Of a DNA stretch of 64,000 bases, positions 5,392 through 21,948 are shown piece by piece. Origin of the DNA: Blepharisma stoltei ATCC 30299. Lineage: Eukaryota; Protista; Ciliophora. Position 1 is the stretch's first letter; the number at the start of each line of letters is the position of its first letter. Under the pieces are notes generated by a model. The model saw only the letters and a program-made list of their open reading frames with translations. It was not told the origin of the DNA and ran no database searches. The position numbers and the translations under genes were made by a program. The stretch covers positions 186,001 through 250,000 of the forward strand of contig CBFDEM010000024.1 of the NCBI GenBank assembly GCA_965603825.1, given 5' to 3'.

Positions 5392-6660
5392 ATGTCAAAA
5401 AATTTCAAACCGCTGCTACACGATTCTTACAATGTTGGAAAACATATAAAATCATCTAAAAAGCGCTTTACTTGGAAATTTGAGCTTGATGGCCAAGAGC
5501 ATGTCGTCGATCTTTACGTTTCAAAAATTTCAGGCAAACGAAAAGTACTTGTTGACGGCGATATCAAAATCCAAGCCAAAAAATCAGCTATTTATGGCAG
5601 CTATCCCTTAAAAATCGGCCGCCATAACCTTTTAATTAACGAGCAAATCGACAGCGTTTTTGATTTGCAAGTAGACAACTGTTCATTTGAAGCAGGGAAT
5701 CAGAGAACTCGGGCTCAAAGTGATTTTAGATACAATGATCAGTACCAATATGAAGCTGAGCCAAATTTACAGCAGGTTTTAGAAGCCAGGGATCCTTACC
5801 AGCCAAGAAAATCTGCTGATCCCTTTGCAGAAAAAAATGAGCCTTATAAAAGCGACTTTAGTTACAATGATCCATTTCAAAATAAAAGCTCCCAAAGACG
5901 GTCATTAATAGCTGAAACAAGAGACCCGTTTGAGAATAGAAAGCTTAATGGCTTATCGGGCGAAAGAAGAGATCCTTTTGAGAATAGAAGGGTTGGATTA
6001 TCAGGAGAAAGAAGAGACCCATTTGAGAACAGAAGAACTGGTAGCTTAGCAGGTGAGAAAAGAGATCCATTTGAAAATAGAAGGGTTGACTCATTCAGAA
6101 AGCGTCCAGAAAATAACGAAGAATGGGAAAGATATGAAGACTTTTTTGACCCAGAAAAATACCCATATGCTGAAAAAGAATTTGGAGTTGAAAGCCAAAG
6201 AAGAGAGTCAAGAGTTATTGAGAGAAGCACAATGCCTGCACAGCCTAGCTCAGCTCCAAAGCCTGTAGAAGAGAAGCCTAAAGAAGCTGCCAAGCCGCAA
6301 GATCAAACTAATTTACTTGATGCTCCATATCAAGCTTCTACATTGCCACATGATATTTTTGTAAGCAATACAAATACAACATCAACCAAGCCAACCAATA
6401 ATCCTTTCAATGGTCAAGCTGCCTTAGCAAATAATTTTGACTGAAATTCTGTAGCGCCGAAGCCAGAAGAAAATAAAACCCAACCTCCCCAAACTAATTT
6501 TCCACCAAATGCATTTCCAATGGGGATGCCTCCACAGATGGGAGCACAAGGCATGCAGCAAGGCCAAATGAACCCTATGGCTGCTATGATGGCTTATAAC
6601 CAATTTATGACAGGAATGATGATGGGACAATACATGAATCCTCAGCAGCCATTTAGATAA
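5392..6660 (+). CDS. FAIM1-like N-terminal domain protein with DPF/NPF motifs and a Pro/Gln/Met-rich tail, 422 aa
   Basis: WKFELDGQEHVVDL..SGKRKVLVDG resembles FAIM1. Reading TGA 6442-6444 through gives a P/Q/M tail ending at TAA 6658-6660. Confidence 0.75.
5914..6084 (+). repeat. Coding tandem repeat, 4 copies of 45-48 nt encoding E(R/T/K)RDPFENR(R/K)
   Basis: Repeated AGAGAYCCNTTTGARAAYAGAA units. Confidence 0.9.
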
Positions 6661-18188: not shown

Positions 18189-18842
18189 ATGGAAACGATG
18201 ATATCATTATTAGGGACTGTTGGATCAATTATTTCAGTCAGTGTTAGCTTATCCCCAGCCAGTAGAATGATGAAAGTACAAAAAACCAAAAAGTTAGATG
18301 AAGTTCCTTATTTGTTTTTGTTACTAAATCATCTTTGTTCATTATCATGGGCTACTTATGGGTTTATAGGTGGATATGGTGCAATTATGATTAACAATGG
18401 TATATCTACTGTAATTGGGCATTGTTTTATAGGTTGGTATCATCAAATTAAAGGCGATCTCGCTAGCTACATGCTAGTCTACACCACAGCAATTTTTGCA
18501 TCAGCATTGATACTTATTTCTTTTATTCCTATTGACATTATCGGATGGATTTGCCTAATTTCAAATTTCGCATTATATTTAGGGCCTTTAGAAACATCAA
18601 GCAAAGCCTTAGCAGAAAAAAATCCAAATTATATAGATATTTTTATCATAGGAATTTGCCAAGTGAATTCACTGATCTGGATGAGTTATGGGATCCTAGT
18701 CCAAAACAATTTTATAGTAGCTCCATGCCTATTTGGAGCATTTCTCTGCGCTTTTCAAATAACAATTTATGTTTGGGCAAATAATTGGTTTCCTATGCCA
18801 ATTTATGAGAAATTATCTAAACTCTTAGCCAATAAAAAATAA
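18189..18842 (+). CDS. SWEET/MtN3 sugar transporter
   Basis: 7 TM segments in two MtN3 repeats (LSP..., W.TYG, GPL..., WMSYG..N.FIVAP). Confidence 0.88.
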   Translation: METMISLLGTVGSIISVSVSLSPASRMMKVQKTKKLDEVPYLFLLLNHLCSLSWATYGFIGGYGAIMINNGISTVIGHCFIGWYHQIKGDLASYMLVYTTAIFASALILISFIPIDIIGWICLISNFALYLGPLETSSKALAEKNPNYIDIFIIGICQVNSLIWMSYGILVQNNFIVAPCLFGAFLCAFQITIYVWANNWFPMPIYEKLSKLLANKK

Positions 18843-18895: not shown

Positions 18896-20218
18896 TTAAT
18901 CAGCATTTGCCACTTTTTCACTTGTCCCAGGAGCATAATATCCACTCATTCCAATTTCTGTGCCTTCCAAGGTTTCCTTTTGCATTACGTCATCTAAAAT
19001 CAGCATCCCAATAACCCTTAATAGCAAAAACACAATAATAGCCCAAAACATTGCCCAGCCCATTATAGTAAAAACTCCCACAACTTGTGCAGCAAGATTA
19101 TGGCCAGATGATTCTTGCCAAAAAATTCCATAAGTATCTGTTATAAAGCCTGGCAAAAATCCTCCCAAAAATGCAGGGGCTCCAAAAGTTGCAGATACGT
19201 TCATAGTATCATCAATTCTCATCCATCTAAATATCGTATAAAAAAGCGTAAACCAAACTCCAGACATAACTCCTACGATACCTGCCTGCCATACCGCTGA
19301 ATTAAATGCTGATGAGGCTATCATTACTTGTCCTGCTATAAATCCTTGGTAAATAGCTATATAATGGGTATGTAAATCATGCTTGCTCATAGTCATTAAC
19401 ATATAAGCAGTTATAGCTGATAATGAGCCACAAATTCAACTATTGATGGCTCCTATGCCTCGATGAGTATTTGTTGGTGCTAATGAAATGGTCAAGCCAA
19501 AAATTCCGAGCATAGTTAAAGTTGCACCTAATACGTAAATAACATGGCTCTCCATGTAGAAATAATGCTCTGTGCGCTGATCGAATCTTCCTAGTCTTTT
19601 TCCTGTAAGTATTGCAGCTACATACGCAATAGACCCAGCAAATAAAAATACTGTGATTGTGCCTCCTAAATCAATCATTGGGACATCTTTAATTTCTGAA
19701 TAAAGCCACCCTCCACCCCAATTCCAAGCTACTACAACAGGCCAGATCCATGCCATAATTGCGAACGCTATAAAAGGGTATACCAAATATTTGACTTTTT
19801 CTGCTATTGCACAATTCACTATAAAAATTGTAAAAATCCCAGCCAATCCAAAAAAGGAAGCACAAGATCCATGATGTTTATCTCGCTGCTTTAGCCAATC
19901 GTCACCACCAAAGAAGCGTCTTCCTATAAATTCATTATGATATGGGTCGCCGAATGCAAAGCCATATCCTACAAGCCATCATGCTGCAAAACCAATAGAG
20001 AACTGTAGCCAATTTTTAACTATGATATGATTCCCAAAGCCTTTTCGGCATATTCCGTATTCCATCATAGTTAGACCAATCTAAGTAAATGTTACAAGTC
20101 CGAGATAGACATGTATATCTCCTATTGATACCCATGTCAATGGGCAGTTTATGTTAGCAATTTCTGTCTGTGAATTCATTATTGTTGGATGTGATGGAAC
20201 TTGAAAAGTACTTGACAT
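18896..20218 (-). CDS. Amt/Mep/Rh-family ammonium transporter-like protein A (divergent), 435 aa
   Basis: GLTMMEYG, WWLVGYGFAFG, AIAEK, WPVVVAWNWGGGWL, DLGG, GKR, RIDD; one intron and TGA=W. Confidence 0.9.
20081..20095 (-). other. 15-nt intron in Amt A
   Basis: GTAACATTTACTTAG between YLGL and IGLT; carries an in-frame TAG; same position as in the paralogue. Confidence 0.92.
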
Positions 20219-20309
20219 TGTTTTATTTATTATTTTTATCAGAAAATAACTAAAGCCATAATAAATTATTTTTTAAGAGGATATGGTGTCGGGAATTTAA
20301 AAAAATGTG

Positions 20310-20335
20310 TACCATTAAATATGGAATTTTTTCTG
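20310..20335. promoter_or_regulatory. Conserved 26-bp upstream element of Amt A
   Basis: TACCATTAAATATGGAATTTTTTCTG is 25/26 identical to 21923-21948. Confidence 0.6.
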
Positions 20336-20507
20336 TAAACAGCTAAGGAATAGTGAAATTACAAAAAATGATGAGTGAGAATTATTGTGGAAAGTGAAAA
20401 AAGCAGTCTTAATAAAAAACAGAAAAAGAAATATCTTGTAAAATAATGTTTAAGAAGGGTTTGATAATTAAAAAATTATTTTAAATTTATAACATGACAA
20501 ATAATTA

Positions 20508-21809
20508 TTAAATTGCTAAATTTTCATCTTTAAGCTTGTTTTCTTCATTTTCAAGAATTTTAACCTGTAGTTTGTTGTCTAATTTTAAAAGCCCAAAAAG
20601 CTTTAGAAATCCAAATATAATGGCTCCTCACGCTAATGCTCATGGAAAAACTGTTAAAGCAGCTGCTGTTTGGGCTGCAAGAAAATAGCCTTTGCTGTCT
20701 TGCCAAAAACAACCATAAGAATCTGTTATAAACCCAGGGAGAAATGTTCCAAAGCCTGCCGGCATCATAAAAGTCGCAGCAATGTTAATTGGATCATCAA
20801 TTTTCAGCCAATTTCCTACTGAATACCACAAAATAAATCAAATTCCTGTAATAATCCCAACAATTCCTGCTTGTCATGGCGTCGTATTAAATGCAGAAGA
20901 TGCTATAGCAACTTGGCCAGCAATGAATCCTTGATAAATTGATATATAATGTGTATTTAAATCGTGCCTGAACATAAGAATAATCATATAACTTGTTATC
21001 GCTGAAAGCGATCCACAAATTCAGCTATTAACAGCTCCTAATCCTCTGGAAGAGTCAGTTGGAGCAAGTGATACAGTCAAGCTAATAATGCCAAGCATTG
21101 TTAAAGCTGCTCCCAATGCATATATGACGTAATTCCCAATATTAAAAAACTTCTCAGTCAGTTTTTCATATTTTCCAGCCCTTCTTCCTGAAATAACAGC
21201 TCCCATAAGCCCAAAACCACCAGCTACTAAAAATATTTGTATAGTTCCCCCAAAATCTACCATAGCAGCTTCAAATTCTTGAAATTCAATCATAAGCCAT
21301 CCTCCTCCTCCTCAATCTCAAGCTACAACAACTGGCCATATAAAAGCCATAATGCAAAAGGAAATAATTGGGTATACAACAAATCTTACTTTTTCCACTA
21401 TTGCACCATTTATAATAAAAACTACAAAAATTCCAGATAATCCAAAATAAGAAGCACAGGAGCCATGATATTTTTCTTTTTGTGTTAGTCATTCGTCTCC
21501 ACCAAAGAATCGTCGGCCTATAAATTCATTGTGGTAAGCGTCGCCAAATGCAAATGCATAACCAACCAGCCATCATGCTGTAATGCCTACAGAAAACTGA
21601 AGCCAATTTTTTAATATTATGTGCTTTCCGAAGCCTCGACGGCAGATTCCATATTCCAGCATTGTTAAGCCAATCTATTTAGCAGATACCAAGCCTAGAT
21701 ATAATGGGATATCTCCGACGGATAGCCATCTTAAAGGGCAATTTATATTGGGTAAATTAGATGGAGGTTTATAAGGTTCTGCAGGCTCGTAAGGCTCATC
21801 ATAAGGCAT
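20508..21809 (-). CDS. Amt/Mep/Rh-family ammonium transporter-like protein B (tandem paralogue), 428 aa
   Basis: Colinear with paralogue A; many TGA codons align with TGG in A; ends at TAA 20508-20510. Confidence 0.9.
21675..21689 (-). other. 15-nt intron in Amt B
   Basis: GTATCTGCTAAATAG at the same YLGL|IGLT junction as in paralogue A. Confidence 0.92.
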
Positions 21810-21922
21810 TTATATTTTCTGAATAATTATAACTATAAACCATAAGAAAGAAGAATTTCAATAATAAATGATGATTTTTTTATTGCATCGAAATATCTGA
21901 TATGGAATTTTTAAAGAATTTA

Positions 21923-21948
21923 TACCATTAAAAATGGAATTTTTTCTG
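21923..21948. promoter_or_regulatory. Conserved 26-bp upstream element of Amt B
   Basis: TACCATTAAAAATGGAATTTTTTCTG; see 20310-20335. Confidence 0.6.

What the first reader, a model, noticed from the sequence alone, without database searches (positions are those of the whole stretch)
18896..21809. Tandem Amt pair in which both pore histidines are replaced by Phe
Seen: canonical DFAGGTVVH appears as DLGGTITVF and DFGGTIQIF; canonical DDxxxxxxVHG appears as DDTMNVSATFG and DDPINIAATFM; the W.GW.GFN motif appears as MLGIFGLT and MLGIISLT. Both ORFs are intact and share the substitutions. Established: the twin-His motif is nearly invariant in Amt/Mep/Rh, the usual natural exception being Glu at the first site, and it governs selectivity. 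Inference: a twin-Phe subfamily that has another substrate, forms a hydrophobic gas pore, or acts as a non-transporting sensor or regulatory subunit. This is the best candidate here for an undescribed system.
Basis: partly seen in the sequence, partly recalled or inferred. Interest (0 to 1): 0.8.

Follow-up and report, generated by a model that had tools for sequence, protein, structure and literature searches.

The report
Ciliate Amt family with rebuilt pore
Two expressed, conserved Blepharisma genes belong to an apparently undescribed family of ammonium-transporter relatives in giant (heterotrich) ciliates that have lost almost every residue known to be needed for ammonium transport, so they probably do a different job, such as passing a neutral gas or sensing.

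Summary
Observation confirmed. Both genes (Blepharisma stoltei, TGA=Trp) are whole once a 15-nt intron is spliced, as RNA contigs show. Both are under purifying selection (dN/dS 0.08-0.22) and carry Phe at both AmtB His sites. The predicted fold is Amt (Z 46.7).

The real unit is wider than a twin-Phe pair. It is a clade of about 50 sequences (named sources: Blepharisma, Stentor, Fabrea) with H318→Phe in 51 of 52 and Tyr/Phe/His at H168. It also lost the Phe gate, W212 and S219. It includes all eight Amts found in this genome; only three Rh genes keep both His. Outer-pore sites are relaxed, while mid-pore and cytoplasmic-vestibule sites hold new conserved residues. Sister lineages lost the gate but kept both His.

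The two Stentor 'ammonium transporters' induced with carbonic anhydrase after wounding are members (Tyr/Phe). Canonical NH4+ transport is unlikely. Best guess is a passive neutral-gas (CO2) conduit (0.4); rivals are a plugged sensor or scaffold (0.3) and altered ammonia export (0.22). Function is untested. RhCE is a His-less precedent. The scan noted His-less paralogues elsewhere in this genome.

The parts
18896..20218 (-). g1: Amt-fold gene, 435 aa after splicing, Phe/Phe at the His sites
   Evidence: Pfam PF00909 152 bits on the 390-aa database model P0004; transcript contigs
20081..20095 (-). 15-nt intron in TM1 of g1; ends in an in-frame TAG
   Evidence: 15 letters left out in run X2, retained in one X4 contig; same position in all 8 paralogues, Stentor, Fabrea and the orthologue
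20508..21809 (-). g2: Amt-fold gene, 428 aa after splicing (public model CAG9319948.1, amt_3), Phe/Phe
   Evidence: AlphaFold2 model pLDDT 84, pTM 0.87; Amt fold
21675..21689 (-). 15-nt intron in TM1 of g2
   Evidence: spliced in runs X1 and X2, retained in one X3 contig
19646..19648 (-). g1 F186 = AmtB H168 site
19184..19186 (-). g1 F340 = AmtB H318 site
21231..21233 (-). g2 F188 = AmtB H168 site
20769..20771 (-). g2 F342 = AmtB H318 site
20931..20951 (-). g2 H282..Q288: family-conserved polar residues at the AmtB S257/S263 positions of the cytoplasmic vestibule
20291..20335 (-). conserved non-coding block upstream of g1, candidate cis-regulatory element
   Evidence: 84% identical to the g2 copy over 45 nt; also upstream of the orthologue in L027
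21904..21948 (-). second copy of the block, upstream of g2 (covered by transcript contigs)

Best explanation
These are repurposed Amt proteins that no longer capture and deprotonate NH4+. Shown: Amt fold; loss of the S1 site (F107, S219), the Phe gate, W212 and the His pair; a more hydrophobic, slightly bulkier mid-pore (Phe at I110, Tyr/Phe at H168, Phe at H318); a conserved polar cytoplasmic vestibule (His, Gln, Asp, Asn). Inferred: with no His bridge there is no proton wire, so ions are excluded and only a small neutral molecule could pass, down its gradient. The most likely cargo is CO2, in acid-base or waste-gas balance together with carbonic anhydrase, while the three twin-His Rh proteins export ammonia.
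For: Residue tables. In engineered Amts, double loss of the His pair, F215A, or double loss of the Phe gate each stops ammonium transport (PMC3647058; PMC7447429; PMC10433425; PMC6856177). Site rates in the clade: mid-pore median 0.20 and inner vestibule 0.15 against 0.53 for other TM sites (p 6e-4, 0.011); outer S1/gate 0.43, not different. Stentor members SteCoe_3746 and SteCoe_3760 (both Tyr/Phe) rise together with a carbonic anhydrase after bisection (PMC9371601). CO2 passage is reported, though disputed, for Rh proteins (PMC10794816). Rh genes with both His are present.
Against: No transport assay exists. Conserved bulky mid-pore residues fit a plug as well as a channel. The co-induction is a 12-gene cluster that also holds ribosome-biogenesis genes, and concerns Tyr/Phe Stentor paralogues, not g1 or g2. 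Membranes are often permeable to CO2 without channels, and the reported CO2-passing Rh proteins keep both His. Pore-lining assignments come from AmtB by alignment, partly from my own knowledge.
Confidence: 0.4

Rival explanations
1. Non-conducting pseudo-transporter: the aromatic residues plug the pore, and the conserved cytoplasmic His/Gln/Asp/Asn site binds a partner protein or protons, so the protein is a scaffold or sensor, like RhCE.
For: RhCE lacks the His pair, has a hydrophobic block and recruits ankyrin (bioRxiv 10.1101/2022.02.10.479914). RhCE has Tyr at the first His site and Met at the outer gate Phe, as most clade members have Tyr and an aliphatic residue. Mid-pore volume is about 100 cubic A above that of the nearest canonical Amts. 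The inner vestibule is more conserved than in canonical Amts.
Against: No transducer domain (tail about 40 aa or less; Pfam finds only PF00909). The ammonium-receptor N1/N2 signature is absent. No twin-His Amt partner was found in the genome. RhCE works beside active RhAG in one trimer.
Confidence: 0.3
2. Still an ammonia pathway, but a low-affinity outward NH3 valve: the outer capture site is dropped and the new inner His/Asp site recruits or deprotonates NH4+ from the cytoplasm.
For: Ciliates excrete ammonia (own knowledge). Constraint has moved from the outer to the inner vestibule. D160 and W148 are kept. Single His→Ala mutants still pass ammonium, and four paralogues keep H168. NeRh50 transports without an S1 site.
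Against: Most members lack both His and both gate Phe; each double loss abolishes transport in tested Amts. Three Rh genes already cover export.
Confidence: 0.22
3. Carrier for a larger neutral organic solute (amine, urea-like compound or short acid), using an entrance widened by loss of F107, W212 and F215.
For: Smaller residues at the entrance; eight diverged paralogues with different first-site residues; distant fold similarity to urea transporters, Z about 12, which all Amts share.
Against: The entrance is the least constrained part, unlike a specific binding pocket; the mid-pore is bulkier, not wider.
Confidence: 0.06
4. Decaying genes under relaxed selection.
For: Long branches; low transcript depth and some intron retention.
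Against: dN/dS 0.22 for g1/g2, 0.13 and 0.08 against the orthologue, 0.07 for the youngest paralogue pair; family kept and expanded across genera; new invariant residues.
Confidence: 0.02

Closest known systems
Amt/Mep ammonium transporters (PF00909; E. coli AmtB, A. fulgidus Amt-1, AMT1-type eukaryotic Amts)
   Same: 11-helix fold (Z 46.7, rmsd 2.1 A over 360 residues to 2B2F); D160, W148, D309/D310 kept; the clade roots among AMT1-type eukaryotic Amts in the quick tree
   Different: No twin-His, Phe gate, W212 or S219; new conserved pore residues; far below the TIGR00836 cut-off (142-151 against 343 bits)
RhCE/RhD (Rh30)
   Same: Natural loss of the twin-His motif; Tyr at the first site and loss of the outer gate Phe in RhCE
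   Different: Rh branch, independent origin; RhCE assembles with transporting RhAG, whereas no twin-His Amt was found in this genome. Phe at RhCE's second site is my recollection, not shown by a tool.
Ammonium receptors Ks-Amt5 and Sd-Amt1
   Same: Top sequence and Foldseek matches in PDB; Amt scaffold reused for something other than uptake
   Different: They keep the His pair and Phe gate, have an N1/N2 pocket and a fused kinase or cyclase (PMC11152129); none of these is present here
Fungal Mep1/Mep3 (His→Glu)
   Same: Natural change at the first His site
   Different: Polar change at one site with transport retained; here both sites become aromatic and the gate is gone
Paramecium Amt (CAD8209179.1) and gate-less twin-His sister lineages
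   Same: Likely ciliate relatives that already lost F107 and W212
   Different: They keep both His; the Paramecium link is a long-branch placement

Membership tests
Amt/Mep/Rh superfamily (PF00909) | Profile score over the curated cut-off | tested here: met
   145.5 and 151.9 bits against 23.2
Amt/Mep/Rh superfamily (PF00909) | 11-helix Amt fold | tested here: met
   Model of g2; TM-score 0.75-0.78, Z 45-47
Amt/Mep/Rh superfamily (PF00909) | Trimer formation | not testable with these tools
   Monomer prediction only
Canonical ammonium-transporting Amt | Twin-His H168/H318 (or Glu/His) | tested here: not met
   Phe/Phe in g1 and g2
Canonical ammonium-transporting Amt | Phe gate F107/F215 | tested here: not met
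   Ala/Leu in g1, Ser/Leu in g2; Phe in 0 of 52 clade members at either site
Canonical ammonium-transporting Amt | S1 site (F107, W148, S219) and W212 | tested here: not met
   Only W148 kept; S219→Leu, W212→Ile
Canonical ammonium-transporting Amt | D160 | tested here: met
   Asp in 50 of 52
Canonical ammonium-transporting Amt | Ammonium transport | not testable with these tools
   Needs an assay
Ammonium receptors (AmR) | N1/N2 signature QX6EX15NX2D[F/T]X54-60TX2[S/T] | tested here: not met
   No clade member matches; Q→Leu and D→Gln
Ammonium receptors (AmR) | Fused transducer domain | tested here: not met
   Short tails, PF00909 only
Rh proteins | Closer to Rh than to Amt in sequence or fold | tested here: not met
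   No Rh among PDB sequence hits; Rh folds rank below Amts; the true Rh genes are separate loci L001-L003

The most novel reading that the evidence does not exclude
Heterotrich ciliates converted their whole Amt repertoire, step by step (gate lost, then H318, then H168), into channels for a non-ammonium neutral solute such as CO2, used among other things in pH recovery after wounding. This would be an Amt-branch family with a new substrate and a natural series of intermediates.
Probability: 0.35. Interest if true: 0.85.

Novelty: new variant of a known kind. Interest (0 to 1): 0.68.

Why it matters
Papers on the transport mechanism state that His→Glu in fungal Meps is the only natural variation of the twin-His motif (PMC7447429). 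Here is an expanded, selected clade without the His pair, the Phe gate and the S1 site, with living intermediates (His/His gate-less, His/Phe, Tyr/Phe, Phe/Phe). That gives ready-made natural variants for two long-running questions: what the His pair and the gate are for, and whether this fold can be a CO2 channel. It also questions the reading of the Stentor wound-response 'ammonium transporters' (PMC9371601), and Stentor allows RNAi tests. If the proteins still move ammonia, current mechanism models would need revising.

Tried and rejected
Stop-codon readthrough (TAG as Gln, since the TAG aligns with the conserved TM1 Gln): rejected, the 15 nt are spliced. Pseudogene: rejected. Misalignment of the His sites: rejected by three alignments. 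Heterotrimer with a canonical Amt: no such gene found (these searches give lower bounds). Regain of His at the first site in L004-L007: favoured by the tree (97/94 support), but retention was not rejected (AU p = 0.08), so left open. The careful 93-row tree did not finish; its quick version is used. A second structure prediction from a six-row alignment failed (pLDDT 38) and was ignored. ESM Atlas searches returned only ordinary bacterial Amt clusters. Ten literature searches found no description of this family; the library lacks most subscription journals, and Javelle 2006 could not be read. RhCE's second-site residue could not be displayed. One search failed on a TGA codon; one search was a script error.

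Full report
VERDICT. It is one corner of a larger finding: a ciliate clade of Amt-fold proteins that rebuilt the whole ammonium pathway. What they do is untested.

SOURCE AND GENE STRUCTURE. Paralogues and the g2 product are filed as Blepharisma stoltei proteins. With TGA read as Trp, g1 (20218..18896, minus) and g2 (21809..20508, minus) each have a single internal stop, a TAG near codon 45. That TAG ends a 15-nt GT..AG intron. Transcript contigs lack exactly these 15 letters at 20081 and 21675, while others retain them. The runs are only guessed to be RNA, but poly-A ends, very high histone depth, an empty intergenic bin and the splicing itself support that; all four come from one study. The spliced products are 435 and 428 aa. 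The first codons of g1 are not covered by contigs, so its start is inferred. All eight Amt paralogues in the genome have this intron at the same place, as do Stentor, Fabrea and an orthologue from another TGA=Trp species.

THE SUBSTITUTIONS. Against E. coli AmtB, both His sites align without gaps: H168 = g1 F186 / g2 F188, H318 = g1 F340 / g2 F342. An AlphaFold2 model of g2 (pLDDT 84, pTM 0.87) has the full Amt fold (Z 46.7 to A. fulgidus Amt-1). I had no model coordinates, so pore statements rest on alignment to AmtB positions taken from the cited papers and partly from my own knowledge.

THE FAMILY. The genome search gave eight such Amts and three Rh genes; only the Rh genes keep both His (counts are lower bounds). 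Database searches gave a sharply bounded group (34 hits below 1e-70, then a gap to 1e-29). Among 52 members, some of them close variants, H318 is Phe in 51 and Trp in one; H168 is Tyr 30, Phe 15, His 6; no member has Phe at either gate site. Named sources are B. stoltei, B. japonicum, Stentor coeruleus and Fabrea salina, all heterotrichs. The rest are metagenome contigs. In a careful tree this core is one clade (100/99), and the first site changes at least eight times across the 37 rows, so Phe/Phe is a repeated state and not the defining one. g1, g2 and their orthologue L027 form one Phe/Phe branch.

THE STEPS. I ran the full profile search because the range claim rests on absence. It found a wider group that has lost the gate and W212 but mostly keeps both His, with His/Gln, His/Phe and Tyr/Phe side branches. 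Their contigs are compact eukaryotic DNA in the standard code; two of five show an excess of 15-nt intron motifs, the others are unplaced. Paramecium Amts keep both His but have lost F107, W148 and W212. The simplest order is gate first, then H318, then H168. Whether His in L004-L007 is kept or regained is open (AU p = 0.08). Outside the clade 152 of 161 Amts keep both His, and three unrelated ones lack both, so total loss is rare but not unique.

SELECTION. dN/dS is 0.22 between g1 and g2, 0.13 and 0.08 against the orthologue (dS near saturation), and 0.07 between the youngest paralogues. Variants seen in g1 transcripts are 9 silent to 6 replacement codons. Site rates within the clade show where constraint lies: outer S1/gate positions are no more conserved than other helix positions (median 0.43 against 0.53, p 0.28), but mid-pore (0.20, p 6e-4) and cytoplasmic-vestibule positions (0.15, p 0.011; four sites) are. 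In canonical Amts the outer sites are the most conserved (0.10) and the inner ones less so (0.57). One inner site (Gln at S263) was used to pick rows, though the same rows form the tree clade. New near-invariant residues are Phe at I110, Thr at V317, Gln at S263 and His at about S257. The mid-pore is more hydrophobic and about 100 cubic A bulkier than in the nearest canonical Amts, though not bulkier than AmtB itself.

A FUNCTIONAL CLUE. In Stentor, 12 listed genes rise 120-240 min after bisection; they include a carbonic anhydrase and two 'ammonium transporters', SteCoe_3746 and SteCoe_3760, which the authors tie to pH recovery (PMC9371601). Both are members of this clade with Tyr/Phe. A third member, SteCoe_30696, is in the posterior-half regeneration list. 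This is a correlation in a mixed cluster, not evidence of substrate.

MECHANISM. In tested Amts, H168A/H318A, F215A or loss of both gate Phe stops ammonium transport, and non-polar His variants were inactive for methylamine. These proteins combine all of those losses, so canonical NH4+ transport is unlikely (about 0.85 against). That the mid-pore and inner vestibule stay constrained says the pore region still matters. I favour a proton-uncoupled conduit for a small neutral molecule, CO2 first (0.4). A plugged scaffold or sensor like RhCE is close behind (0.3): RhCE also has Tyr at the first site and no outer gate Phe. An outward ammonia valve with new chemistry remains possible (0.22). The known Amt-type receptors do not fit: their signature and transducer domains are missing.

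NOVELTY. A new variant of a known kind. [quoted passage not shown] I found no paper describing the clade, within a library that lacks most subscription journals. Public annotation simply calls them ammonium transporters.

METHOD NOTES. No self-joined spliced model was sent to any search tool: searches used stop-free pieces by reference or protein records returned by the tools (P0005 is the public spliced model of g2). Spliced translations were assembled only inside scripts, from the stored files, for alignments, trees and dN/dS. Two earlier first-reader notes describe His-less Amts on other pieces of this genome; they are not independent support.

Noticed in passing
window 20291-20335 and 21904-21948; L027 about 6230-6275: A 45-nt non-coding block 75-140 nt upstream of both genes (27 of 28 identical in its core), found only at these two places in the genome and kept upstream of the orthologue in another species, although silent sites are near saturation. 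Candidate cis-regulatory element.
   Followed up: partly
window 18189-18842 (+): SWEET/MtN3 sugar-transporter gene convergent with g1; the same neighbourhood is kept in L027, where only one Amt copy is present and a 670-aa gene lies between.
   Followed up: partly
L004-L007 (G000 C48, C22, C58): Four paralogues keep or have regained His at the first site beside Phe at the second; natural single-His variants.
   Followed up: partly
L008 and L010 (G000 C41:124556-127400 approx.): A second tandem pair of the same family, Tyr/Phe.
   Followed up: yes
proteins P0129, P0201, P0235: Unrelated Amts that also lack both His (Phe/Tyr, Tyr/Tyr, Asn/Asn); P0129 and P0201 group with animal Amts. Independent cases worth a survey.
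   Followed up: no
proteins P0209, P0320 (Paramecium): Paramecium Amts keep both His but have lost F107, W148 and W212.
   Followed up: partly
L001-L003: Three Rh50-type genes with both His; the outer gate Phe is Tyr in two of them.
   Followed up: partly
window 20081-20095 and 21675-21689: Both introns are retained in some transcript contigs, which would stop translation after about 45 codons; an ATG follows five codons later.
   Followed up: no
proteins P0123, P0125, P0127, P0131, P0139, P0140, P0155: Very long proteins (1500-2800 aa) that carry a twin-His Amt domain; other domains not examined.
   Followed up: no
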